From the IMG/VR virus record IMGVR_UViG_3300028045_000001, positions 62,001-126,000 of that record: a stretch of 64,000 bases of DNA. One strand, 5' to 3'. Of this stretch, positions 2,021-64,000 are shown piece by piece; within the stretch, counting starts at the first letter, position 1, and every line of letters starts with the position of its first letter. A program made the position numbers and the translations under genes. Under the pieces are notes generated by a model that ran no database searches, had not been told where the DNA came from, and saw only the letters and a program-made list of their open reading frames with translations.

Positions 2021-2133
2021 TTACATGAACCCAAAGGATAGAGGGTAGCACTCTTAATTTTTATGTAGTAATTACATTATATATGTATTGAGGTAATATT
2101 TAGTATTTTAAACGGCACGCATTGGAGAACAAA

Positions 2134-4563
2134 ATGGCAAATAATGAGATAGCAGATTACGGGATGGATGACATTGCGGACTACTCTGACAATAACTTAC
2201 TCGGGATAAGGGTATCGCCGACATCTGTTCTTGGAGAGCTTGGTCCAAAGGGACAGGTATTATGTGCCCGAGAAGTGATTGATAACAGTGTGGATGAGCA
2301 CGTGAAAGCAAAGGTCGCTGTCCCTATAAAAGTATGGATACACGAGTATCGTGGTGGGTATGAGATCAAAGTACTGGACTTTGGTAGGGGCATACCTCCT
2401 GAGGGACTTGAGATAGTAGCAACTAAATTATACACCTCTGCTAAGCAGGGTGGCACTGCTTACGGAGGTGCTACAGCCGGTACATTTGGTATAGGTCTTG
2501 TTGCATCGGCAGCCGCATCCAGATTGTTTTATTGTATTGCTATGAGAGAGGGGGAGTATGCCAAGATAGCGATTGAAGAAGGCAATACCAAAGAGTACAT
2601 CCATGATACGAAAATGGGATTTACACAAAGTGGCACTTACACCTTCATACAGTCGGATCCAAAAATATTTGAGGACTGTGATGAGTTTATTGGTGGTGAG
2701 GGCGAGAAAAGATTAATGGAGTTCTTACACTTCATTTCTGCAGTGTCTCCAAAACACCTACAAATAGAAGTTTATAAATCAAAAGGTAGGCGGACAACCA
2801 TAAAAGACTTACTTGCAGATACTTCAGATGTATTGCGCCAATTCGAAATACCTCCAAGAGCACAAATAATATTTAAAACCAACCCAGACGATACAATGAA
2901 GGAGTATGTCCAACAATATTATGGGATCAGGCCAGAGAATACACTTTTCGATATAACTGAATTGAAAAGGGAGCTTACAGATACTGGCGACATGGGATTC
3001 AATGTAAGTTTTGTAGTAGCCAATAATATGCGGGCCCCAGTACAAGTAATGTCGGCAGTCAACCGTGTATTCATGCGACTCCAAACCTCGGATCACATAA
3101 CTGTATTTTTAAGTACGATCAAAGAAATGGTACTACCCTATATAGACGATGAGGACATTGGAATATTCTTTAGGTCACAATATAGACTACCCATATACCC
3201 ATCAATACTTGTTAATTTAAGGGAGGTCAAATTTGTAGGAGCCTCAAAAGAAGGATTCAAAAGTAATAAATTTAGGGACCGTTACAGGAATGCATTGATA
3301 GAGTGTTTCAATACCCTTCCTGAAAAATGGGAAGAGCTGCATGAAGTATTAAAGGACGACATAGACACTAAGTATAAAGCATTCAGTAAAACAATAGTTC
3401 GCCACAAAGGTTTGAATAATGTATTTGAACATTTGAATAAGCCAAAGAACTATAAGGGTTGTCGAAGTAAAGACAGTCGAATTATAGAATTATTTCTTAC
3501 TGAAGGAAACTCTGCCGGTGATGCATTAAAGACATCACGGGATTCCACCACACAGGCACTGTATTATTTAATGGGGAAACCTGTAAATGCCCTGCAGAAA
3601 AGTAAATACGATGCCGATGAGATATATCAAGATCTTAAGCAGCTAATAGGTGTCGAATCGCATGACGCTACACTTGACAATATGTCGTTTAATAAGGTGC
3701 TCATACTGGCAGATGCCGATGCTGATGGACTGCACATCACAACGTTACTCATAAGTATTTTTTACAAGATCAATCCATTGATTATATCTGAGGGAAGGGT
3801 AGCTATCTGTAACCCGCCATTGTATTCGTTCTCGGTTGGCAACAAGACTTTATTTATGAGGGATGAAAACGCTAGACGCGACATGTTGATAAAGTTAGTG
3901 TATGCTCCGGCGCTGGATATTTTTATACAGACTGGGGATACGGTCATTAAGTTAGAAGGAGACAGCTACAGAGACCTATGCTACATGGTATTGAACGTCG
4001 GCACACGTATAGAGAATGCTGCTAAGATAGTGACTATGGACCCATCTTTGATGGAGCTATTCGCACCAGTAGTAGAGTTACTGAACCCAGATAAGATAGA
4101 CATAAAGGGACTCCAGGAGTATATTGAACTGCCTCTCAGTTATAACGAGATTGATAAAGCTATCATCATAGATATGCAGGATGGCTCCGAAAAAACAATA
4201 CCAATTAATAATTTATACGCTCAATTAAAGGAGGAAGTTTGTCCAGTATTGGATTCAATAAATGCAAAGTACTTTAATTTGTCTGTAACTACAAAGCAGA
4301 CCGATTACTACGAGGATCAACAGGTGACCTTTGTGTATCTACTCGGGCTATTTAAGTTGCTCGATAAGCAGGCAATTATATCTAGATTCAAAGGGATAGG
4401 GCAATTGAATCCCGATCAAATCGGACACACTTGTGTATCTCCAGCGACGCGATCCATAATAAATATATATGCTATAGGGGATGTGGAAAAGATAATGGCA
4501 TATCTTGGAGAAGACCCTTCTATTAGAAAATCAATAATAGAAAATGTTGATGCAATAATTTAG
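2134..4563 (+). CDS. gyrB: Type IIA topoisomerase subunit B (GyrB/ParE-like)
   Basis: GHKL motifs EVIDNSVDE, DFGRGIP, GTFGIG; TOPRIM EGNSAG, GKPVN, DADADG; C-terminal RFKGIG; ATG 2134 follows GGAGAA (ORF track starts at TTG 2122). Confidence 0.9.
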   Translation: MANNEIADYGMDDIADYSDNNLLGIRVSPTSVLGELGPKGQVLCAREVIDNSVDEHVKAKVAVPIKVWIHEYRGGYEIKVLDFGRGIPPEGLEIVATKLYTSAKQGGTAYGGATAGTFGIGLVASAAASRLFYCIAMREGEYAKIAIEEGNTKEYIHDTKMGFTQSGTYTFIQSDPKIFEDCDEFIGGEGEKRLMEFLHFISAVSPKHLQIEVYKSKGRRTTIKDLLADTSDVLRQFEIPPRAQIIFKTNPDDTMKEYVQQYYGIRPENTLFDITELKRELTDTGDMGFNVSFVVANNMRAPVQVMSAVNRVFMRLQTSDHITVFLSTIKEMVLPYIDDEDIGIFFRSQYRLPIYPSILVNLREVKFVGASKEGFKSNKFRDRYRNALIECFNTLPEKWEELHEVLKDDIDTKYKAFSKTIVRHKGLNNVFEHLNKPKNYKGCRSKDSRIIELFLTEGNSAGDALKTSRDSTTQALYYLMGKPVNALQKSKYDADEIYQDLKQLIGVESHDATLDNMSFNKVLILADADADGLHITTLLISIFYKINPLIISEGRVAICNPPLYSFSVGNKTLFMRDENARRDMLIKLVYAPALDIFIQTGDTVIKLEGDSYRDLCYMVLNVGTRIENAAKIVTMDPSLMELFAPVVELLNPDKIDIKGLQEYIELPLSYNEIDKAIIIDMQDGSEKTIPINNLYAQLKEEVCPVLDSINAKYFNLSVTTKQTDYYEDQQVTFVYLLGLFKLLDKQAIISRFKGIGQLNPDQIGHTCVSPATRSIINIYAIGDVEKIMAYLGEDPSIRKSIIENVDAII

Positions 4564-5209: not shown

Positions 5210-7435
5210 ATGAAAAAAGAAGGACATGGATTTTTAGGACTAACTGACGATGCGACGTCATCTGACGTAATAGAACAATTCAGCATCGAGTATATGTTGT
5301 CCCTATTGCAACAGCGAGCCAGACATGGGATCGATGGCCTGTCAAAGGTTCTAAGAAGGATAATATATGTTGTTCACGCAGTCAATAAAAAGAAGAAAGT
5401 CTATAATCATACTGGCATGGTCATGGATTATCACCCATCAGGTGACAGTAGCATAAGTGACGCTATGACCAGCCTCATGCAGCCATGGGTAAATGCTATC
5501 CCATTGTTGGACAATCAAGGCGGTATAGGTAGCTACAGTGGAAGCAGGGCTGCTGCAAGTAGGTACCTAGAGGGCATGGTATCCCAATTCACAAGGGACG
5601 TATTCATAACCCCATCCTTTAATAAAACATTGACTATGATACCGGTATCTGGAGAAAAGCTATATGAACCAGAATACTTTATACCGAAAATTCCAACTGC
5701 ATTTATAATGGGGTCTAATGTAACTGCAAAAGGATTTCGAACTAAATCGCCTCAGTATAATTTTAACGACGTGTGCGAATTAGTTAAATATTTATCAGAG
5801 CATATATTGGAAAAACAGACCGATCTAACGGATGAGCATCTTGATGAGATGGCTAAGTACCTTATCCCAGACCCACCGTCGCACGCCCATCTAAGGAATA
5901 GGCGGCAATTATTGGCAGGTATAAAGGAGCGAAGGTTTGATATCCCATTGGCATTCGATGGGCATTTGGACATAAGTAGGTCCTCTGTGATCGTCAAGAG
6001 CATACCGCCTGGATACTCCTTCGTTAAAAATGTCGATGACAAACTCAAAGACCTTATCAGAGATAAGAAATCCTGGCTATGGCCGATACAAGAAAACTAC
6101 AATGATGAGACCGATCAGAGGTCCTCTGTTATGTGGGCAAAAGCCCGGATAGAATTAAAGAGATCGGCGGATGTGTTTGAGCATTTGCATTCATTCAAAT
6201 CAGCCGTAGGGTTCTCTCAAAATAATGTTTATAATTATAAATGGCTATATAGAGGACAACTTAGGGTTCTTAATCCAATAGAAATGCTAACGCTCTGGGC
6301 TAAAGAACGAATGAGCAACATTGGCTCGGAGTACACTCATTCAATAAAAACAAAGATTGAGGAGAACAGACGGTTAAAGGCACTGATAAAAATACAAGGC
6401 CACACCAAGGAAGTTATTAGAATCATTGAGGATAGCGAGGACACAGTTGACGCAAACAAAGCGCTAGCTAATAAATTCGAGATATCTGTGTATCAGGCGT
6501 CCGCTATAACTGCGATGCGAACTGGGCAACTAACCAAACGAAGTAAGGCAGTGCTCATGGAAGATGAGAAACAATCCGTGCGCTCTATAAAAGAACTAAA
6601 TAATGCATTCAAACAAATACCAGAACGGATGTTCCAGGAAGCGGACCAATTGCAAAATAAGTATAGTGGGAGAGCGGGCAGAAGGACCAGTTTTTCTAAT
6701 TTCAGTATGTATGTACAAATATTCAATAGAACGAGTACAGGATTCATCCAGTTGTACAGCATGGATGAATTAAAAAAGAAGTTTGTTGATTTCAAGGGAG
6801 TGCCTATGAATATAGGTAGTTTTTCAAAAGGTCGAGATTATAAGTACATTCTGGTAGACGGATCAGTTATAACTGAAGTTAAAAAAGACTTGCCGAAAGA
6901 ATCAACTGGCGTGCTGGTAACCAGTCCCAATAAACTTATGTATACGGTTAAGCTGAGTGATGGTACTATATGTTATTTAAATAAACTATATGCTATTGAA
7001 AATGGAACGTTGGTTTCTGACAAAGTATTATTGGTAACCAGAAAGGGAACCCTAACTGAGACAGCCACTACTTCGCTCCCTCTTAGGAAAAGTGCAAAAG
7101 CAGTCGGCAATATGACCGATGTCAAGCATGTTGCCAATGTCCCAGGAAAACAATATTATGTCGTTTATGTTGACCCAAAAGAAAAGAATGTAATACGGGC
7201 CACTATGGTGACGACACCACAGGGCAGTATAAAGCAAGTTTCAGTACGAACAAAAATACTGGCTGTGAATAAAATGACTCAACCATTGATGGTGACACTG
7301 CCATCAGACGTGATAAATAGACTCAGTACAAACCACATCTATATAAGTGACATGCGCCCAAGATTTGATAAGTCTGCCCACATCGTAATCGATGTTAAAA
7401 AATTAAAGAAGAAAAGATCACTATTGATTGGTTAG
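5210..7435 (+). CDS. gyrA: Type IIA topoisomerase subunit A (GyrA/ParC-like)
   Basis: DGLSKVLRRI (canonical DGLKPVxRR), YHPSGDSSI (YHPHGDxxI), catalytic AAASRYLE (AAAMRYTE), coiled-coil QAxAI..MR, ~240-aa beta-rich C-terminal region. Confidence 0.88.
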   Translation: MKKEGHGFLGLTDDATSSDVIEQFSIEYMLSLLQQRARHGIDGLSKVLRRIIYVVHAVNKKKKVYNHTGMVMDYHPSGDSSISDAMTSLMQPWVNAIPLLDNQGGIGSYSGSRAAASRYLEGMVSQFTRDVFITPSFNKTLTMIPVSGEKLYEPEYFIPKIPTAFIMGSNVTAKGFRTKSPQYNFNDVCELVKYLSEHILEKQTDLTDEHLDEMAKYLIPDPPSHAHLRNRRQLLAGIKERRFDIPLAFDGHLDISRSSVIVKSIPPGYSFVKNVDDKLKDLIRDKKSWLWPIQENYNDETDQRSSVMWAKARIELKRSADVFEHLHSFKSAVGFSQNNVYNYKWLYRGQLRVLNPIEMLTLWAKERMSNIGSEYTHSIKTKIEENRRLKALIKIQGHTKEVIRIIEDSEDTVDANKALANKFEISVYQASAITAMRTGQLTKRSKAVLMEDEKQSVRSIKELNNAFKQIPERMFQEADQLQNKYSGRAGRRTSFSNFSMYVQIFNRTSTGFIQLYSMDELKKKFVDFKGVPMNIGSFSKGRDYKYILVDGSVITEVKKDLPKESTGVLVTSPNKLMYTVKLSDGTICYLNKLYAIENGTLVSDKVLLVTRKGTLTETATTSLPLRKSAKAVGNMTDVKHVANVPGKQYYVVYVDPKEKNVIRATMVTTPQGSIKQVSVRTKILAVNKMTQPLMVTLPSDVINRLSTNHIYISDMRPRFDKSAHIVIDVKKLKKKRSLLIG

Positions 7436-57610: not shown

Positions 57611-59161
57611 ATGTCACATCTCTTTCACACATACATGGCACGTAGAACTAAAACTGAGTCTACGAAAGATATGCCATTTAGTGAACAAGTCTGGATAAAC
57701 AATGCAACCTCAGCTTACGATGCCTTATCATTGCGACACAAAATTATACATTGTGTCAGGCAACGTTTTATACATTCATATTTTAAGCATGTTTGTGATA
57801 TATATCATGTCGATGGCCCATCTATTTTTACGGACATGGAAGCCGAATTTAATCGAAGGGAGAAGCGGATTGATGACGAGATCAATTATGCTAACGTAGG
57901 AGACTATGACGATGCTTGGTCCATAGCTAAGTCATTCATCACCCGTTGCAGATACATTAAGGGATACATGCCACCGAACGAAGCTCGTGAATTGGTCAGG
58001 CCAGATATTAATGATATCATGGGATTTTTTATAGATCAGAATACAGAAGAAAATTTTGTACCGAGTGTAGGTGGGCTTGATGCAATTAAAGGGATAGTTG
58101 CCTTCATTTTATATGCGGTAAAGCAACATGTTCCGATAACTGAAATGGATACCTTTATTCCGGATCCTTGTGTCCTATATCCAATGTATTCTGGGAATGG
58201 AGTTGTCTGGGTGAATAAAGTCCAAGTAGCCGAGCCGGGCTACTTACCCGAACGCAAGCTTCGGGAAGACTATAAATTTCATGATCATATATTAAGCTAT
58301 TTGAACATGCTGAACTTATCCGGCCAAGATTTTAACGCCATCATGCTATCCCTTTCATGCTTAGCGGTTGTAAATGACTCCCGCTCTGCGACAGGCTTTC
58401 AAAGATTATGTAATGTTGTAAACAATTATTATCTTAGCGGACAAAGACTCTCCAATAAATGGGAGGCTAAACTACCAGCACCTATATTCTTAGCAACAAT
58501 GAGATTTATGAGTGCACTGGTGACCGAGAATAATGTAAAAGTAGACAATCTTCACCTGTTGCATTTCATCTATGATCATGCACCTCCAATATATGCAAAT
58601 CTTGGCGATGTTGTCAAAAAGGCAATTGGAGGCCGGTATGTAAACCAGCATGAGGTGGCTATGCTAAAGAAATATGGCATTTCTAAAATAGTGCCAATGA
58701 AACGTAGCTATGATCTTTATAATCATATAAGGATGAATGCGGCTGACGATGATTTAGGTGAAGATGAATCAGTTACTGAAAATGATACAGGTGAGGGCGA
58801 CGGAGAAGAGGTTACTGGCGATAAGAACGTTGATGCCGGTGACGCGGATTCTGATACTAACATTTCAGATCCAGATGCAGACGGATCTGCCGAAGGGGAG
58901 GAGGAACCTGAAGAAACCCATATCGTAAAGATTGATGACGCTGGTATAGAATTTGAATTAAGTAGCGGTAATCTCTCATTTGCTGAATATATTTTGAGAG
59001 AAAGAATTATAAAACGATTGAATACAATATTGGCCAACCCAGGTAATCTTTCGGCAGAGAAAGTTGAATACTTAAAGTATTTCAGAAATCACTGGATTTA
59101 CTTGGTCAGTATAAACACTCTGTTGGCAATAACAAAAAATCTCAATATTGAAGGAGTTTGA
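57611..59161 (+). CDS. Conserved protein between helicase and capsid gene (phiKZ gp119 position), acidic C-terminal linker
   Basis: AGGAGG RBS; D/E-rich low-complexity stretch then YILRERI...LKYFRNHWIYLVS; ATGA-type overlap with capsid gene. Confidence 0.65.
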   Translation: MSHLFHTYMARRTKTESTKDMPFSEQVWINNATSAYDALSLRHKIIHCVRQRFIHSYFKHVCDIYHVDGPSIFTDMEAEFNRREKRIDDEINYANVGDYDDAWSIAKSFITRCRYIKGYMPPNEARELVRPDINDIMGFFIDQNTEENFVPSVGGLDAIKGIVAFILYAVKQHVPITEMDTFIPDPCVLYPMYSGNGVVWVNKVQVAEPGYLPERKLREDYKFHDHILSYLNMLNLSGQDFNAIMLSLSCLAVVNDSRSATGFQRLCNVVNNYYLSGQRLSNKWEAKLPAPIFLATMRFMSALVTENNVKVDNLHLLHFIYDHAPPIYANLGDVVKKAIGGRYVNQHEVAMLKKYGISKIVPMKRSYDLYNHIRMNAADDDLGEDESVTENDTGEGDGEEVTGDKNVDAGDADSDTNISDPDADGSAEGEEEPEETHIVKIDDAGIEFELSSGNLSFAEYILRERIIKRLNTILANPGNLSAEKVEYLKYFRNHWIYLVSINTLLAITKNLNIEGV

Positions 59162-61254
59162 ACATGTTTCTAAATGAAATACTTTCTAGTATCGATGACA
59201 ACCATGATAATAAGGGCGATCTTGCTGCTGCCGGTGCGACAGCTATTGGGCGCAAGATCACAAAAACGGTAAATCAATGGACTGCCCACAACAACCTTGA
59301 CGGGACAGTAGGGACGTATCAAGTACCAGCTGTAAACTCTGCACTTGATGAGCACACACTCGAATCAATAGGGGTCGAAGCCATAGATGCGCTTGTAAAA
59401 TCCTGTGATATCACATCTGGTTCCCTCCAGGCAAAGAAACTTGTTGCTATCGATATTGCAAAGAATGCTGTCTGTTCTGGACCGGACATCATGTCTCTCC
59501 AAAATATGATGGACCCTATGAACTCGGAAGTTCAGTTTACTGATCCTGGGACACTATCATTCTTCCCAAGCTCTGTCCCCGATGCACATGCATTTGGTTC
59601 GGATATCGATAAGGTATCATCCGATTTACGTCTCACACTTTCAGTGGACATTATGTCATTTCATAATCGAATTGCCCACAGGTTGATGCACGTTAAACCA
59701 ACTCCAGATGCAATCATTCGCTATCGAAAAGTGAAAGCAGTGGTCTTCAACAACCAGGATATGGATGCTGCCACGATGGAGCTTGTGGATCTGTATGAAG
59801 ATGCATCGATCGTTAGTCCTACGCTTCCCAAAGTTATTCCACGGACAGCGAATGGTGCTCCAGAAGAGGGATACATAGAGCCAGGTTCAGATGATCTGTT
59901 TAAACTATCGATTGATGCTTCCAAGCCAGGGTACTCCTCTTACAATCGACAGGACACTATTGCTGATGGTGCCTTCATTGATAAGGTCAAGTGGGAAATT
60001 GGCCCAGATGCCGCTGGTCGATCTGATATGATCTATACCGTGGGTAAAGCGCGGGGCAAGCTTGGATTTACCACAAACTCCGAAGCATCTATGCGTACGC
60101 TATTCTTTGAGACCGACATCATTGTCGACAAAACAACAGAAGATGCCAGTGGTACTGCTGCTGCAGCTTTTGCTGGCATCCATGCGGATGACCAACTGGT
60201 AATTAAGTTGACACTCACTGTGAGACTTCACCTTCGCACCGGCGACATAAATACTACCGGAAGCGTTGCTGCAGTTAAAGTGGAAAAGAAGGGTGGGGGC
60301 ATAGCACAGCCGAGTTCTACTACCGCTCTAGAGGCTATCCAAACAGGCGTGGCGTTTACGAAAATATCTTCATATGCGATTGATGCAAGATTCTCAGAAG
60401 AAAATCTTCGAAAATCTTCTATTGAGATTGAAGCGATCCATTCCGAACTTGCTTACAACCTTCCAACTGGAGTTAACTACTTTTACAGCGAACCACTCAT
60501 GGGGAAAAAGAAAGATGACCGAGCGGTTGAGCTGCTGACTTCAATCATTGGGATCGGCCAGGATAAGAAAGTTGCAGGCGAGATCGAGCAGGTACTTAAT
60601 GATATCACGTCCGCTATTACTGTTACAGACGATAGTTACTCACACAATGGTGCTGGTACAAGCTATGCAGCCGGATCACTGGTACGGCCATTTGTATATA
60701 CTGGAAATATTGACTGTAACGATTTCAAAACACATGAAATCTCAAATCTGCCATATGATGTTAAACAATTTGTTATGACAACAATTGGAAATGTTCTGGA
60801 CAGAATTCATGCGACCAGTTTCTTTCCGCAACAGCTGGCAGGAAGAGCTCCCACATATAAGGTGCTAACTTCCGGGGACATCATCTCCAAGCTTTTCTCT
60901 CAGCCACGGATGGCAATTGCAGGACAACCGGACAAGTCCACCACTCTTGAGGGTGGATCTTCGTACAGACTGGAACTTCCAAATGGAGCCATCATTGAAC
61001 TTCATGCATCTACCCAGGCAGAGCATGCAGATAAAATTATCGGTATCCCATATGTGAGCGATCCAAATTCTGAACTTAACTTCGGAGCAAATTGGACATT
61101 CGGCATTGCAGTGGCCCATTATGTAAAGACTGGCGCGGCTGTTGCAAAACGCATTGTTGCTAACTCAAGGGAGGCATTCATTCCTACGAACCCACTTGGA
61201 TTCCTATTGAGTGTACGTAACCTTGATGATATTCTAAGTAACTACAAGGACTAG
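59158..61254 (+). CDS. Major capsid protein (phiKZ gp120/EL-type)
   Basis: 698 aa; position after helicase + gp119-like gene; AFG..DK...DLRLTL.V.IM.FH, DARFSEENLRK, C-terminal ELNFG...F...VAHY......RIVAN.RE..IPTNPLG..L.V patterns. Confidence 0.78.
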   Translation: MNMFLNEILSSIDDNHDNKGDLAAAGATAIGRKITKTVNQWTAHNNLDGTVGTYQVPAVNSALDEHTLESIGVEAIDALVKSCDITSGSLQAKKLVAIDIAKNAVCSGPDIMSLQNMMDPMNSEVQFTDPGTLSFFPSSVPDAHAFGSDIDKVSSDLRLTLSVDIMSFHNRIAHRLMHVKPTPDAIIRYRKVKAVVFNNQDMDAATMELVDLYEDASIVSPTLPKVIPRTANGAPEEGYIEPGSDDLFKLSIDASKPGYSSYNRQDTIADGAFIDKVKWEIGPDAAGRSDMIYTVGKARGKLGFTTNSEASMRTLFFETDIIVDKTTEDASGTAAAAFAGIHADDQLVIKLTLTVRLHLRTGDINTTGSVAAVKVEKKGGGIAQPSSTTALEAIQTGVAFTKISSYAIDARFSEENLRKSSIEIEAIHSELAYNLPTGVNYFYSEPLMGKKKDDRAVELLTSIIGIGQDKKVAGEIEQVLNDITSAITVTDDSYSHNGAGTSYAAGSLVRPFVYTGNIDCNDFKTHEISNLPYDVKQFVMTTIGNVLDRIHATSFFPQQLAGRAPTYKVLTSGDIISKLFSQPRMAIAGQPDKSTTLEGGSSYRLELPNGAIIELHASTQAEHADKIIGIPYVSDPNSELNFGANWTFGIAVAHYVKTGAAVAKRIVANSREAFIPTNPLGFLLSVRNLDDILSNYKD

Positions 61255-61296
61255 TGACAAGGTCACAGCATAAAGAAATGATGCATGTTTATTGAT

Positions 61297-61334
61297 GAGA
61301 CAACCAGCTTCCCATATGGGAAGCTGGTTGTCTC
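61297..61334 (+). terminator. Perfect 38-bp loopless palindrome (centre CATATG) after capsid gene, followed by T-tract
   Basis: GAGACAACCAGCTTCCCAT|ATGGGAAGCTGGTTGTCTC then CCTTTTTT. Confidence 0.88.
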
Positions 61335-61414
61335 CCTTTTTTATTATAGGTACCGCATCTGGTGAAATCCAGCTACTGCCCGTTGAGTTTCTTTTGTTCT
61401 TCAATAATTTTTGG

Positions 61415-61425
61415 TTATATATAAC
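61415..61425 (+). promoter_or_regulatory. One-mismatch promoter variant TTATATATAAC upstream of SDR pair
   Basis: 10/11 match to the 8-copy motif, at similar distance from an AGGAGG RBS. Confidence 0.45.
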
Positions 61426-61474
61426 TAACACGAGTAGTATTATTTATTAATCCAACTTATTAGGAGGTATCACC

Positions 61475-62188
61475 ATGAACAAAAAGAAAGTAGCTATTGT
61501 CGCAGGGACAGAAAAGTATGGGGCACATACTATCGGCAATGCCATAAGGGAAGCACTGTCGTTTAAATACGATGTGATAACGGTTGGCCGCTATGGTGGG
61601 GATATTGAGGTAGAAATATCAAGGGGAAATTATTTGAAATTACTGGATGCCATCGTCGATAAGTTAGATGGCAGGCATGTGGCGCTGTTAGTTAACTCAA
61701 TGGCTACAAACGAAGATGACTTATTAATCGAGGAGAATCTATTCCCCTATACAATACTGTACGATGTGCTGACAGACAATGGATTGTTCGGGAACAATAT
61801 AGTGGGCTTCCAGGAGTCCACTGAACCTAAGGCACACAGTGTGATTAACATTGGGGGCCTTAGTGCATATATGGTGGGTAGAGGGAAAAGGAACCACACC
61901 ATACTAAAGGCAGCTATTGATGGGTTTACCAAAAGTATAGCTGCACAGGGGGTGCGATGTAACACTATATCTCCGGATCGCGTTATGGCTCATTACGAAA
62001 TAACGGAGGGATCGGAAAAAGAGTTCGTGGAGAACTATCCAAAAGCGAGTGCCTGGAATCCTTTGGGCAAAGTACTTATGGCAAAGGACGTTGCAGAAGT
62101 GGTCGTCATGGTGGACAATTGCGCAGCTATCAATGGGCAAAATATATTGGTAGATTATGGACACTCTATCGTGCAGAAAGAATTTTAA
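61475..62188 (+). CDS. Short-chain dehydrogenase/reductase-fold protein 1 (catalytic Tyr replaced)
   Basis: KVAIVAG...IG, LLVNS, VINIG, HTILKAAIDGFTKSIAAQGVRCNTISP, DVAEVV...INGQNILVDYG. Confidence 0.8.
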   Translation: MNKKKVAIVAGTEKYGAHTIGNAIREALSFKYDVITVGRYGGDIEVEISRGNYLKLLDAIVDKLDGRHVALLVNSMATNEDDLLIEENLFPYTILYDVLTDNGLFGNNIVGFQESTEPKAHSVINIGGLSAYMVGRGKRNHTILKAAIDGFTKSIAAQGVRCNTISPDRVMAHYEITEGSEKEFVENYPKASAWNPLGKVLMAKDVAEVVVMVDNCAAINGQNILVDYGHSIVQKEF

Positions 62189-62257
62189 AGTTAGAAGCGC
62201 CCATAGTCATGCTGTACTCTGTTATTAACTTTTTTCGTATAAGGAGTAAAAAGGACC

Positions 62258-62974
62258 ATGCTAAACAAAAAGGTAGCTATAGTTACCGGTGCCTCAAAGA
62301 TGCGACCGAATATTATAAACAATGCCATAGGTAGGGCGTTGTCTGACAGGTACGATATAATAACGATAGATAAACATAGTGGAGATATTCAAATAGAGAT
62401 ATCCAGGGAGAATCAATTTGAGTTGTTGAATGCGATCAATGACAAATTGAAGGGTAGGCCAGTCTGGCTGCTAGTTAATGCAAACGCCATCCTTACATGC
62501 GACGAAAAACATCCGCCACATAATAAGTTATTTCCAAATCATAGCTTCCCTTACCTCATAATGTATGATATATTAATGAATAATGGATTATTCGTTAAAG
62601 CGGGATTTAAGCCGATACATAGTGTGATCAATATTAGAAGTGCATTTGCTGACGCCATTCAGAAAACCACTCATAATGACACTATGGTAAAGGCGGTAAT
62701 AAATGGGTTCACATATAAATTGGCAGCTGAGGGGGTGCGGTGCAATACTGTATCTATAGGGCCGGTTTTAATGAGGACTACTTCACAAAAATTGACGGAT
62801 GAAGAAATTAAAATGCTTTATCTTCAAATTAAAACATGTCCTCTAGATAGAACACTTATGCCGGAGGACGTTGGAGATGTGGTAGCTATGATAGATGCAT
62901 GTAAAGCTATCAGCGGGCAAAATATACGTGCCGATTATGGCCAACATGTATCCAACAATAACTTACATAGATAG
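62258..62974 (+). CDS. Short-chain dehydrogenase/reductase-fold protein 2 (catalytic Tyr replaced)
   Basis: KVAIVTGAS, LLVNANA, VINIRS, DTMVKAVINGFT..LAAEGVRCNTVSIG, PEDVGDVV...ISGQNIRADYG; tandem paralog. Confidence 0.8.
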   Translation: MLNKKVAIVTGASKMRPNIINNAIGRALSDRYDIITIDKHSGDIQIEISRENQFELLNAINDKLKGRPVWLLVNANAILTCDEKHPPHNKLFPNHSFPYLIMYDILMNNGLFVKAGFKPIHSVINIRSAFADAIQKTTHNDTMVKAVINGFTYKLAAEGVRCNTVSIGPVLMRTTSQKLTDEEIKMLYLQIKTCPLDRTLMPEDVGDVVAMIDACKAISGQNIRADYGQHVSNNNLHR

Positions 62975-63060
62975 AGAACTCGTACCTATGTATCGCCATA
63001 ATGGCGTAACGGAATCTGATATTAATTTACCACAGGTTGATAAAATAAGAGGTGAATACT

Positions 63061-63483
63061 GTGAAAGGAATTAAGCACAAGCATGACGACATTCGATTTC
63101 TAAAGGCAATCATAGAAGAAAATGCAATAGAAGAACATTGGTCATTTATTGATAAGTTGTTTTCTGAAATCATCAATAAGCGGCACGAGCTATTCTATGC
63201 GAAAAAGGCAGACCCAATTGAGTTTAACGTCACTATGTATTCTTCGGGCACGGATGGCTTTTTAGAATTATCATGTAAAATAATAGGGGTGCTGTATGAT
63301 AGCGAGTACAATAGCTCCAAATTATGTGTGGACATAGATGGGATTGTTTCGAGCTTGGACACAACTATGATCCTTTCTATAGATGGCACCCCATTCCATA
63401 AATGGCTTGGACAATGTCATTTAAAATTAATAGAAAGCATGAGAGCACAGTTGGACGAAGAAGTAGTTAACTTTTTTATATAA
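63061..63483 (+). CDS. Hypothetical protein (~140 aa)
   Basis: AGAGGTG RBS before GTG 63061 (ORF track 63052). Confidence 0.7.
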   Translation: MKGIKHKHDDIRFLKAIIEENAIEEHWSFIDKLFSEIINKRHELFYAKKADPIEFNVTMYSSGTDGFLELSCKIIGVLYDSEYNSSKLCVDIDGIVSSLDTTMILSIDGTPFHKWLGQCHLKLIESMRAQLDEEVVNFFI

Positions 63484-63520
63484 TTTAAAATCCATCTATT
63501 TAGTATAAAGGAGACTTGTT

Positions 63521-64000
63521 ATGAAGGACTTTACATCATTGGAGAATGAGCTACGCAGATCGGAAGAAGTAGTCTCAGAACATAAAGCTCAATTACTTGT
63601 GGCAGAAGAAGCACAGGTAATACTATTTGGACAGTTTAAGCTTCGGGAATATAAGTTATTTCGTGGTATCGTCAAATATTTTCTACTTAACGAATTTATT
63701 CGCGAGTGGACAATTACCACAAAGGTAAATGGCATTTATAAAACTATATCTGGGATAATGCTTGGTACAAGTACCGCAAATGAGTTGTATGTTCGCAATA
63801 CCGATGTCGCATGCACTTTCCCAACTTGGATACCGATGCACTCGATAACCACAATATCAGGATATAAGATACTCGATTGGATTAAACGATACTGTGAAGA
63901 AATCGAAATCCACAAAATGGCTCGAGCGATAGCGAACCGCCCCGTTCCAATTGGAACTAAGATCGCATATTGTTCAGGTAAGGATAAATTAAAATTCGTG
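63521..64000 (+). CDS. Hypothetical protein, truncated by window end (MKDFTSLENELRRSEE...)
   Basis: AAGGAG RBS, ATG 63521, open to the end of the window. Confidence 0.75.
   Translation, partial: MKDFTSLENELRRSEEVVSEHKAQLLVAEEAQVILFGQFKLREYKLFRGIVKYFLLNEFIREWTITTKVNGIYKTISGIMLGTSTANELYVRNTDVACTFPTWIPMHSITTISGYKILDWIKRYCEEIEIHKMARAIANRPVPIGTKIAYCSGKDKLKFV

What the first reader, a model, noticed from the sequence alone, without database searches (positions are those of the whole stretch)
61415..62974. Tandem SDR paralogs that both lost the catalytic tyrosine: phage pseudo-enzymes
Seen: two ~238-aa paralogs with SDR architecture from beta1 (KVAIV.G) to the C-terminal GQ.I..DYG. The YxxxK Tyr is His (HTILK) in one and Asp (DTMVK) in the other, while the Lys is kept. 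The glycine-rich cofactor loop is distorted by insertions (AGTEKYGAHTIG; TGASKMRPNIINNAIG). A promoter variant lies upstream. Known: SDRs need Tyr/Lys for hydride transfer and form dimers/tetramers; NmrA-like atypical SDRs act as redox sensors; many anti-phage systems deplete NAD+ or use nucleotide signals. Inference: a hetero-oligomeric NAD(P)/nucleotide-binding sensor or sponge, or a dominant-negative mimic of host FabG/FabI.
Basis: partly seen in the sequence, partly recalled or inferred. Interest (0 to 1): 0.7.

Follow-up and report, generated by a model that had tools for sequence, protein, structure and literature searches.

The report
Two dead-site SDR paralogs in phage
A marine phiKZ-like jumbo phage carries two adjacent, selectively maintained copies of a FabG-like reductase fold that have both lost the residues such enzymes use for catalysis, so they probably do something other than ordinary redox chemistry, but what that is remains untested.

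Summary
Window 61475-62188 and 62258-62974 (+) encode paralogs of 237 and 238 aa (44% identity, E 2e-59). Both pass Pfam adh_short_C2. One was modelled and gives a confident classical-SDR fold (pLDDT 87).

Aligned with 111 SDR relatives, the Asn-Ser-Tyr-Lys tetrad reads Leu-Gly-His-Lys in A and Leu-Ser-Asp-Lys in B. The TGxxxGxG loop carries four extra residues, and B has lost two of its glycines. NNAG and PG are degenerate, and PF00106 finds neither gene.

The genes are not decaying: dN/dS is about 0.14-0.23, with dS saturated. Between the copies, core strands and helices are 50-86% identical, while the glycine, active-site and substrate loops are 10-22% identical.

A phage promoter motif of phiKZ type (61396-61426), set after a strong terminator, heads the pair.

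No relative closer than generic SDRs (E 2e-9) turned up in 1.84 billion representatives. Identical DNA occurs in four seawater metagenomes.

A heterodimer prediction gave only weak support. The sponge and FabG-mimic ideas remain untested.

Verdict: these are real pseudo-reductase-like SDR paralogs, a new variant of a known kind, with function unknown.

The parts
61297..61334 (+). Intrinsic terminator closing the major capsid gene (59158-61254). It is a perfect palindrome with 19-nt arms followed by CCTTTTTTAT. It separates the late capsid transcript from the SDR unit.
   Evidence: capsid assignment phrog_3231, E 1.6e-13
61396..61426 (+). Phage-specific promoter-like element: GTTCTTCAAT, a 9-nt spacer, then TTATATATAACT. 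This is the A-variant of the genome-wide motif tTCAAT-N9-TTATATATTACT. It ends 48 nt before the SDR-A start codon.
   Evidence: Motif enrichment: 13 observed against 3.0 expected, with 0 of 100 shuffles reaching 13. Genome-wide sites with the upstream box lie mostly 40-60 nt before SD+ATG. The motif resembles the published phiKZ TATATTAC and 201phi2-1 TTTRARR..TATATTAC promoters (PMC7058600 Table 2).
61462..61467 (+). Shine-Dalgarno site AGGAGG, 7 nt before the SDR-A ATG
61475..62188 (+). SDR-A (P0001, 237 aa), a FabG-like classical SDR fold. Tetrad positions are L99, G128, H141, K145. The Gly loop reads AGTEKYGAHTIG, with all three glycines kept but four residues inserted. G38-R39 follows beta2. 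The PG motif reads PD.
62241..62246 (+). Shine-Dalgarno-like AAGGAG, 11 nt before the SDR-B ATG. The 69-nt spacer between the genes has no terminator.
62258..62974 (+). SDR-B (P0002, 238 aa), paralog of SDR-A. Tetrad positions are L106, S128, D141, K145. The Gly loop reads TGASKMRPNIIN, with the second and third glycines replaced by Met and Asn. D38-K39 follows beta2. The PG motif reads IG.
63052..64000 (+). Two downstream ORFs of unknown function: 143 aa at 63052-63483, and 195 aa starting at 63521 and running past the window end. They lie on the same strand with no predicted terminator before the DNA polymerase gene, so they are probably in the same transcription unit.

Best explanation
The two genes encode tandemly duplicated, very divergent FabG-like classical-SDR-fold proteins that no longer have the canonical redox machinery. 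I call them pseudo-reductases. The phage keeps them for a role that depends on the fold and its oligomerisation surfaces rather than on Tyr-mediated hydride transfer.

Shown:
- the SDR fold (modelled for SDR-A only; SDR-B by homology)
- loss of Asn and Tyr in both copies, and of Ser in A
- an expanded, degenerate glycine loop
- purifying selection since the duplication
- conservation concentrated in the core strands and in helices alphaE and alphaF, with the cofactor, active-site and substrate loops diverged
- an own phage promoter motif following a terminator

Inferred:
- The ancestor was already non-canonical before the duplication, because the Asn-to-Leu change and the loop insertion are shared by both copies.
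- The pair is transcribed with the non-structural (early or middle) genes, not with the adjacent capsid gene.
- The proteins assemble as SDR-type dimers or tetramers, possibly mixed A/B.
- They act by binding something, either a partner protein or a ligand, rather than by turning a substrate over.

If any dinucleotide binding survives, copy A is the better candidate: it keeps its three glycines, Asp43, Lys145, and a Gly-Arg after beta2 of the NADP type.
For: - Family and fold. PF13561 is above cut-off for both proteins. PDB sequence hits to MupS and FabG reach E 3e-8. AF2 with a 113-row alignment gives pLDDT 87 and pTM 0.87. Foldseek against FabG and other SDR structures gives E 1e-12 and TM 0.62-0.78.
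- Lost motifs, in the alignment with 111 relatives. The tetrad reads L/G/H/K in A and L/S/D/K in B, where the family columns are N 80/109, S 106/111, Y 108/111 and K 109/111. Four residues are inserted in TGxxxGxG. B has Met and Asn where 99 and 106 relatives have Gly. PF00106 (adh_short), which models the cofactor and catalytic part, finds nothing in the genome at E <= 0.01, these two genes included.
- Selection. dN is 0.44-0.52, dS is 1.9-3.4 and omega is 0.14-0.23. Identity by codon position is 59%, 71% and 40%.
- Pattern of conservation between the copies. Well conserved: beta1 86%, beta5 75%, beta6 78%, beta7/C-terminus 67%, alphaF 53%, alphaE 52%. Poorly conserved: Gly loop 22%, beta5-alphaF loop 10%, substrate loop 11%. 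The best-conserved DNA stretch (77 nt, 70%) covers alphaF-beta6.
- Expression signals. There is a terminator at 61297-61334 and the enriched promoter motif at 61415-61426. In the window the same motif also lies shortly upstream of the topoisomerase II large-subunit ORF and of several small ORFs; no match was listed near the sheath, terminase or capsid genes.
- No catalytic partner in the genome. There is no third SDR and no ACP.
- Precedent. Inactive SDR subunits that serve assembly are documented in BbsCD and in petunia benzaldehyde synthase (PMC13418739).
Against: - No biochemical data exist. A missing Tyr does not prove inactivity. From my own knowledge, SDR-fold enzymes such as eugenol synthase use the Lys alone. 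Lys145 is kept in both copies, and His or Asp at position 141 could act as an acid or base.
- The heterodimer prediction was only a weak pass.
- No orthologues are known, so conservation across phages cannot be tested. The only evolutionary comparison is between the two copies, and its dS is saturated.
- No RNA data were available.
- The model's coordinates could not be inspected, so an alternative Tyr reaching the active site cannot be ruled out (Y132 in A; Y92 and Y96 in A, equivalent to Y99 and Y103 in B).
Confidence: 0.55

Rival explanations
1. They are still enzymes, working by non-canonical chemistry on the SDR scaffold. The mechanism could be Lys-centred, or use His141 in A or Ser128/Asp141 in B as proton donor or acceptor. 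The activity could be a reductase, epimerase, isomerase or dehydratase acting on a host metabolite, perhaps with a composite active site in a mixed oligomer.
For: - Lys145 is invariant in both copies, as are Asp43 (adenine-binding position), Asn74 and Asn163.
- Three of the 111 SDR relatives also carry His at the Tyr column, and two of them also keep the Lys.
- Purifying selection fits an enzyme as well as it fits a binder.
- The two copies keep complementary features: A keeps the glycines, B keeps the Ser.
Against: - Three of the four tetrad residues are gone in A and two of four in B.
- The pyrophosphate loop is lengthened and differs between the copies (22% identity).
- The PG-Thr nicotinamide contacts are lost.
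- The active-site and substrate loops are the least conserved parts.
- No pathway partner such as an ACP or another SDR is present in the genome.
Confidence: 0.3
2. One reading: a hetero-oligomer that binds NAD(P) or an NAD-derived or cyclic-nucleotide immune signal and so blunts host defence.
For: - The Rossmann-type fold is retained, along with Asp43 and Lys145.
- The promoter is of the class that lies upstream of non-structural genes, which would suit a counter-defence role.
Against: - The dinucleotide-binding loop is the part most altered and it is not conserved between the copies. B lacks two of its three glycines.
- Neither protein matches any PADLOC model, and the genome has no hit to the NAPRTase (PF04095) or CTP_transf_like/NMNAT (PF01467) families.
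- There are no relatives in other phages, whereas the known sponge families I am aware of are widespread.
Confidence: 0.07
3. One reading: the dead subunits mix into host FabG-type tetramers (or FabI) and disturb host fatty-acid synthesis.
For: - The best sequence and structure matches are FabG proteins.
- The interface helices alphaE and alphaF, and beta7, are among the conserved parts.
Against: - Identity to any FabG is only about 20-25%.
- alphaE carries its own paralog-specific sequence (FPYxIxYDxLxxNGLF) that differs from the SDR consensus.
- The host is unknown, so no host partner could be tested.
- The FabI-type Y-x6-K motif is absent: the residue seven positions before the Lys is Lys138 in A and Thr138 in B.
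Confidence: 0.05
4. They are relics of a once-active auxiliary metabolic gene and are now drifting neutrally.
For: Catalytic and cofactor motifs are lost, and no relatives are known.
Against: - Both frames are intact, with ribosome-binding sites and a promoter.
- omega is 0.14-0.23, and third codon positions (40% identical) have diverged far more than second positions (71%).
- The fold core is conserved.
- Codon usage is typical of the genome.
- The sequence is identical in four seawater samples.
Confidence: 0.03

Closest known systems
FabG / MupS-type 3-oxoacyl-ACP reductases (classical SDRs; Pfam PF13561 and PF00106)
   Same: Same fold and length class. They are the best sequence and structure matches (E 3e-8; Foldseek E 1e-12, TM 0.62-0.78). 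Shared features are the beta5 hSVINI, the alphaF Lys, GVRCNT in beta6 and the C-terminal GQxIxxDxG.
   Different: Here the Asn, the Tyr and (in A) the Ser of the tetrad are replaced. TGxxxGxG is lengthened by four residues. NNAG and PG are degenerate. The helix between beta2 and beta3 is missing. PF00106 does not detect them.
Heterotetrameric SDRs with an inactive subunit: BbsCD (Thauera), petunia benzaldehyde synthase alpha2beta2, and human HSD17B8/CBR4 (PMC13418739 and its references 29 and 30)
   Same: Two dedicated SDR paralogs, of which at least one has lost canonical catalytic residues yet is retained for assembly.
   Different: In the two complexes with a dead subunit (BbsCD, petunia BS), the other subunit keeps a full tetrad and does the chemistry. 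Here neither copy has Tyr or Asn, and the genome holds no third SDR. Assembly of this pair is only weakly predicted.
Lin1944-like short SDRs (PDB 3d7l; NCBIfam NF005754 / PRK07578)
   Same: This is the only PDB sequence match for the N-terminal half (residues 17-66, E 7e-5). It shares the very short beta2-beta3 connection: VITxGRxxGDxxVxIs.
   Different: The score is far below the family cut-off (33.5 against 167 bits) and the match covers only residues 19-62. The C-terminal half is FabG-like. Lin1944 has a plain GxxGxxG loop.
Structural (pseudo-)ketoreductase subdomains of type I PKS/FAS, and naturally Tyr-less SDRs such as HSDL1 (named from my own knowledge, not tested here)
   Same: SDR folds that have lost cofactor-binding or catalytic residues and serve as scaffolds.
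   Different: Those are domains of large synthases or eukaryotic proteins. There is no sequence relationship beyond the superfamily.
NmrA/HSCARG atypical SDR redox sensors
   Same: Rossmann-type proteins without the catalytic Tyr that bind dinucleotides as sensors.
   Different: Those are atypical or extended SDRs with GxxGxxG and an extra C-terminal domain. The phage proteins are classical-type, no NmrA family was hit, and their glycine loop is degenerate.

Membership tests
Classical SDR superfamily (FabG-like) | One-domain Rossmann-type alpha/beta fold of about 250 residues | tested here: met
   AF2 model of SDR-A: pLDDT 87, pTM 0.87. Foldseek against the PDB: FabG and other SDRs at E 1e-12, TM up to 0.78. 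The ESM Atlas structural neighbours are all SDRs, TM 0.77-0.82. SDR-B itself was not modelled.
Classical SDR superfamily (FabG-like) | Family HMM above the curated cut-off | tested here: inconclusive
   PF13561 is met, at 44.3 and 38.3 bits against 27, but only over the C-terminal half, residues about 120-230. PF00106 gives no match at E <= 0.01. All NCBIfam hits are far below their cut-offs.
Classical SDR superfamily (FabG-like) | Cofactor motif TGxxxGxG at beta1-alphaB | tested here: not met
   A reads AGTEKYGAHTIG, with four inserted residues. B reads TGASKMRPNIIN, with Met and Asn at columns that are Gly in 99/108 and 106/109 relatives.
Classical SDR superfamily (FabG-like) | [quoted passage not shown] | tested here: not met
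   A has L99, G128, H141, K145. B has L106, S128, D141, K145.
Classical SDR superfamily (FabG-like) | NNAG (beta4) and PG(xxxT) (after beta6) motifs | tested here: not met
   NNAG reads NSMA and NANA. PG(xxxT) reads PDRVMA and IGPVLM.
Classical SDR superfamily (FabG-like) | Binds NAD(P)(H) and catalyses hydride transfer | not testable with these tools
   This needs DSF or ITC and enzyme assays.
Heteromeric SDRs with a pseudoenzyme subunit (BbsCD, petunia BS) | One subunit with an intact tetrad that performs catalysis | tested here: not met
   Neither copy has Tyr or Asn, and there is no other SDR in the genome.
Heteromeric SDRs with a pseudoenzyme subunit (BbsCD, petunia BS) | The two paralogs assemble into one hetero-oligomer | tested here: inconclusive
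   Complex prediction returned 'weak support': ipSAE 0.37, best control 0.00. The full qualifiers are in the report.
FabI-type (divergent) enoyl reductases | Y-x6-K active-site motif | tested here: not met
   The residue seven positions before K145 is Lys138 in A and Thr138 in B (sequences). FabI models hit only the C-terminal 85 residues, far below cut-off.
Lin1944-like short SDRs (NF005754) | Full-length match above the 167-bit cut-off | tested here: not met
   33.5 bits, residues 19-62 only. PDB 3d7l matches residues 17-66.
NmrA-like atypical SDR sensors | NmrA-type architecture or family match | tested here: not met
   No NmrA hit in Pfam at E <= 1. All matches are classical FabG-like SDRs.
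Known phage anti-defence sponges or defence-system proteins | Homology to a described family | tested here: not met
   No PADLOC model matched at E <= 0.01. The only named PHROG hit is the weak FabG-like phrog_3142. Dedicated anti-defence libraries were not available.

The most novel reading that the evidence does not exclude
A jumbo phage has turned a duplicated reductase fold into a fully non-catalytic A/B hetero-oligomer, in which neither subunit is active. It is made with the early or replication genes and works by sequestration, either of a host SDR-type enzyme or of an NAD-derived small molecule. That would be a host-takeover or counter-defence factor of a kind not described before.
Probability: 0.1. 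Interest if true: 0.8.

Novelty: new variant of a known kind. Interest (0 to 1): 0.4.

Why it matters
SDRs are among the largest enzyme families. Subunits that are dead but retained are known only as helpers of an active partner. A pair in which both members have lost Tyr and Asn, yet both stay under purifying selection inside a streamlined viral operon, would be a clean natural example of an enzyme fold taking on a non-catalytic job. It could also point to a new way phages interfere with host metabolism or immunity.

The practical value is limited for now. The phage is uncultured and marine, has no known relatives, and no function can be assigned without biochemistry.

Tried and rejected
- **Searches for relatives.** All came back empty or generic.
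  - megablast and tblastn against GenBank phages gave no DNA match and only five weak FabG-like hits at 26-30% identity.
  - The word-indexed search of 5.8 billion clusters found only the query itself.
  - Exhaustive HMMER over 1.84 billion representatives gave generic SDRs, with the next best hit at E 2e-9.
  - IMG/VR scans with the single protein and with the pair alignment found nothing.
  - The capsid protein also has no relative in IMG/VR (close search) or in GenBank phages at E <= 1e-5. Synteny in related phages therefore could not be examined.
- **Structure prediction.** Single-sequence AF2 failed (pLDDT 38). The model built with the alignment was used instead.
- **Population variation for pN/pS.** Contigs from four seawater runs carry no differences at all in 61000-63600. 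The one low-identity piece, in X3, is a 34-nt chance overlap.
- **RNA evidence.** No RNA run was listed.
- **Heterodimer prediction.** The verdict was 'weak support'.
  - The score was 0.37 and the best of three controls was 0.00.
  - The mark was reached by 58 of 80 solved complexes and by 2 of 110 mismatched pairs. At a score of 0.60 or under, however, it was reached by only 7 of those 80 solved complexes and by both mismatches that passed.
  - The runs agree in at least 89% of their contacts, and the partner's pLDDT is at least 71.
  - My own alignments were used, so these counts hold only roughly.
  - SDR dimers are abundant among solved structures, so the pass may come from the model's memory.
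  - The test cannot tell hetero- from homo-oligomers. I do not rely on it.
- **Genome context.**
  - No ACP (PF00550), Nampt/NAPRTase (PF04095), NMNAT (PF01467) or other SDR (PF00106) is present.
  - No PADLOC model matched.
  - The two downstream ORFs have no family and are not paralogs of each other.
- **Rejected reading: a FabI-like enoyl reductase**, considered because the glycine loop is long. There is no Y-x6-K motif.
- **Rejected reading: recent horizontal acquisition.** Codon usage lies within one standard deviation of the genome's. Only SDR-A has a somewhat high GC3, at 0.46 against 0.38 +/- 0.04.
Full report
**What is there.** The window is bases 62001-126000 of a 239,960-bp virus record with direct terminal repeats. 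At 61475-62188 and 62258-62974, both on the + strand, lie two ORFs of 237 aa (SDR-A, P0001) and 238 aa (SDR-B, P0002). Each is preceded by a Shine-Dalgarno-like site. The two proteins are 44% identical over their whole length, E 2e-59. The ORFs on the opposite strand inside the two genes are short (52-86 aa), and I treat them as spurious.

**They are SDR-fold proteins.**
- Both pass the Pfam gathering score for adh_short_C2, at 44.3 and 38.3 bits against 27, although only over residues about 120-230.
- The best PDB sequence matches are MupS and FabG proteins, down to E 3e-8.
- A single-sequence AF2 run failed (pLDDT 38). With an alignment of 111 SDR relatives plus the two paralogs, SDR-A folds confidently (pLDDT 87, pTM 0.87) as beta-alpha-beta repeats.
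- Foldseek places that model among FabG and other classical SDRs, at E 1e-12 and TM up to 0.78. Viral FabG-like proteins come next.
- The ESM Atlas neighbours are all SDRs.

**The catalytic and cofactor motifs are gone.** I aligned both proteins with 111 relatives drawn from the exhaustive search. The tetrad columns compare as follows.

| Tetrad residue | Family column | SDR-A | SDR-B |
|---|---|---|---|
| Asn | 80 of 109 | L99 | L106 |
| Ser | 106 of 111 | G128 | S128 |
| Tyr | 108 of 111 | H141 | D141 |
| Lys | 109 of 111 | K145 | K145 |

- HMMER pairwise and profile alignments to solved FabG and MupS structures give the same Tyr and Lys register.
- The TGxxxGxG loop has four extra residues in both copies. 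SDR-B has Met and Asn where 99 and 106 relatives have Gly.
- NNAG reads NSMA and NANA. PG reads PD and IG. The following Thr is lost in both.
- The helix between beta2 and beta3 is absent. That gives a short hairpin whose only PDB sequence match is Lin1944 (3d7l).
- The adh_short model PF00106, which covers the cofactor and catalytic part, finds nothing in the genome at E <= 0.01, these two genes included.
- A FabI-type Y-x6-K is also absent: the residue seven positions before the Lys is Lys138 in A and Thr138 in B.
- Retained residues are Asp43 (adenine position), Asn74, Lys145, Asn163 and the C-terminal GQNIxxDYG.

**They are not decaying.**
- Over 229 aligned codons, dN is 0.44-0.52 and dS is 1.9-3.4 (saturated), giving omega of 0.14-0.23. 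Identity at codon positions 1, 2 and 3 is 59%, 71% and 40%.
- Because dS is saturated, the omega value is rough. The direction of the result is clear.
- The Tyr-site codons are CAC (A) and GAC (B). Each is one step from TAC and one step from the other, so the order of the changes cannot be told.
- The shared Leu at the Asn site and the shared loop insertion indicate that the ancestor was already non-canonical before the duplication (inference).
- Codon usage is typical of the genome.

**Where the copies agree and differ.**

| Element | Identity between copies |
|---|---|
| beta1 | 86% |
| beta6 | 78% |
| beta5 | 75% |
| beta7 / C-terminus | 67% |
| alphaB | 64% |
| alphaD | 60% |
| alphaF | 53% |
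| alphaE | 52% |
| glycine loop | 22% |
| substrate loop | 11% |
| beta5-alphaF loop | 10% |

- The best-conserved DNA stretch (77 nt, 70%) encodes alphaF-beta6.
- Selection has therefore kept the scaffold, together with the helices that form the usual SDR dimer interface (established knowledge of SDR quaternary structure). The surfaces that bind cofactor and substrate in real enzymes have drifted apart.
- This is the main reason I favour a non-catalytic role.
- It also argues against both copies binding the same nucleotide in the same way.

**Expression context.**
- The major capsid gene (59158-61254; phrog_3231) ends in a perfect 19+19-nt hairpin with a T-run at 61297-61334.
- Then comes GTTCTTCAAT-N9-TTATATATAACT at 61396-61426. 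The 12-mer TTATATATWACT, allowing one mismatch, occurs 13 times in the window against 3.0 +/- 2.1 expected; 0 of 100 shuffles reached 13.
- Genome-wide there are about two dozen sites that also carry the tTCAAT box nine or ten bases upstream. Most lie 40-60 nt before an SD plus start codon.
- The motif resembles the published promoters of phiKZ (TATATTAC) and 201phi2-1 (TTTRARR..TATATTAC) (PMC7058600).
- From my own knowledge, that phiKZ motif is the early class read by the virion RNA polymerase. The late class is TATG at the transcription start (PMC7618050).
- In this window the motif also lies shortly upstream of the topoisomerase II large-subunit ORF and of several small ORFs. No match was listed near the sheath, terminase or capsid genes.
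- No + strand terminator is predicted between SDR-B and the DNA polymerase gene downstream.
- I therefore infer that the pair is transcribed with the non-structural genes, despite sitting next to the capsid gene. No RNA data could be found to confirm this.

**The phage.**
- PHROG matches identify DnaB-like helicase, UvsX-like recombinase, split topoisomerase II, tail sheath, terminase, virion proteins, DNA polymerase and a split RNA polymerase beta' subunit. Together they mark a phiKZ-like jumbo phage.
- The helicase is only about 32% identical to its counterparts in Serratia, Klebsiella, Erwinia and Pseudomonas jumbo phages.
- The capsid protein has no tblastn match in GenBank phages.
- The SDR region occurs with zero differences in contigs of four seawater metagenome runs. 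Two hold it almost whole and two hold fragments. It is therefore a real circulating marine phage and not an assembly artefact.

**Uniqueness.** No relative of the pair closer than generic SDRs exists in any collection searched. The genome contains no further SDR, no ACP, no Nampt or NMNAT, and no PADLOC match.

**Oligomer test.** One heterodimer job gave 'weak support'.
- The score was 0.37, with the best of three controls at 0.00.
- The mark was reached by 58 of 80 solved complexes and by 2 of 110 mismatched pairs. At a score of 0.60 or under, it was reached by only 7 of those 80 and by both mismatches that passed.
- The runs agree in at least 89% of their contacts, and the partner's pLDDT is at least 71.
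- My own alignments were used, so the counts hold only roughly.
- Many SDR dimers are solved, so this may reflect the model's memory. It also cannot separate hetero- from homo-oligomers. I treat the hetero-oligomer as plausible but unproven.

**Comparison with known systems.** The closest functional analogy is the set of heterotetrameric SDRs with a dead subunit: BbsCD, petunia benzaldehyde synthase, and more loosely HSD17B8/CBR4 (PMC13418739). The difference is essential. In the two complexes with a dead subunit, the other subunit has a complete tetrad. Here neither copy does, and no third SDR is encoded. The NmrA analogy fails on architecture. The FabI and Lin1944 memberships fail their tests.

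**Verdict.** The 'pseudo-enzyme' reading is the best-supported one, at about 0.55. Non-canonical catalysis is the serious rival, at about 0.3. The sponge and dominant-negative ideas are untested speculation, and neutral decay is disfavoured. This is a new variant of a known kind, a dead-site SDR. It is interesting mainly because both copies are dead yet conserved, and because it sits in a viral non-structural operon. With no relatives, no host and no biochemistry, its interest is moderate.

Noticed in passing
window 135, 2010, 4603, 9142, 41264, 44564, 44635, 46016, 61415 (+ strand); genome-wide list: There is a phage-specific promoter-like motif, tTCAAT-N9-TTATATATTACT(AT), with about two dozen copies in the genome. 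Most lie 40-60 nt upstream of SD+ATG. It lies shortly upstream of small ORFs and of the topoisomerase II gene, and no match was listed near the capsid, sheath or terminase genes. It closely resembles the published phiKZ and 201phi2-1 promoters.
   Followed up: partly
window 61297-61334: A perfect 38-nt palindrome terminator follows the capsid gene. The Logan assemblies of two runs break exactly here, leaving a separate 34-nt piece at double depth. This is an assembly effect of the hairpin, not a biological junction.
   Followed up: partly
window 59158-61254: The major capsid protein (698 aa) is recognised only by the phiKZ-type PHROG profile (phrog_3231, E 1.6e-13). It has no tblastn match in 50,697 GenBank phage records at E <= 1e-5 and no close relative in IMG/VR, so this is a very divergent jumbo-phage lineage.
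   Followed up: partly
window 2122-4563 and 5210-7435: Topoisomerase II is encoded as two large separate genes (813 and 741 aa), with a 143-aa ORF between them.
   Followed up: no
L005:12097-13413 (genome 137096-138412, outside the window): A 438-aa protein has a C-terminal NUDIX domain just above the Pfam cut-off (21.6 against 21.1 bits) and an N-terminal part with no family. The genome has no NMNAT or Nampt, so this is not an obvious NAD-salvage module of the KVP40 type.
   Followed up: no
L005:6090-7547 (genome 131089-132546): A split multisubunit RNA polymerase beta' piece (phrog_2987, E 1e-80; Pfam RNA_pol_Rpb1_2) lies about 7 kb downstream of the SDR pair, as in phiKZ-like phages.
   Followed up: no
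window 61000-63600 in runs X1-X4: The region is found without a single nucleotide difference in seawater metagenomes from four different studies (2018-2019). That points to a widespread, clonal marine phage population.
   Followed up: partly
proteins P0006, P0123, P0148 (metagenomic SDR relatives): A few natural SDRs carry His at the catalytic Tyr column. P0006 has Cys at the Ser column, then His and Lys. P0123 is a 58-member Chloroflexota cluster. There may be unrecognised His-type SDR subfamilies, or these may be local misalignments.
   Followed up: no
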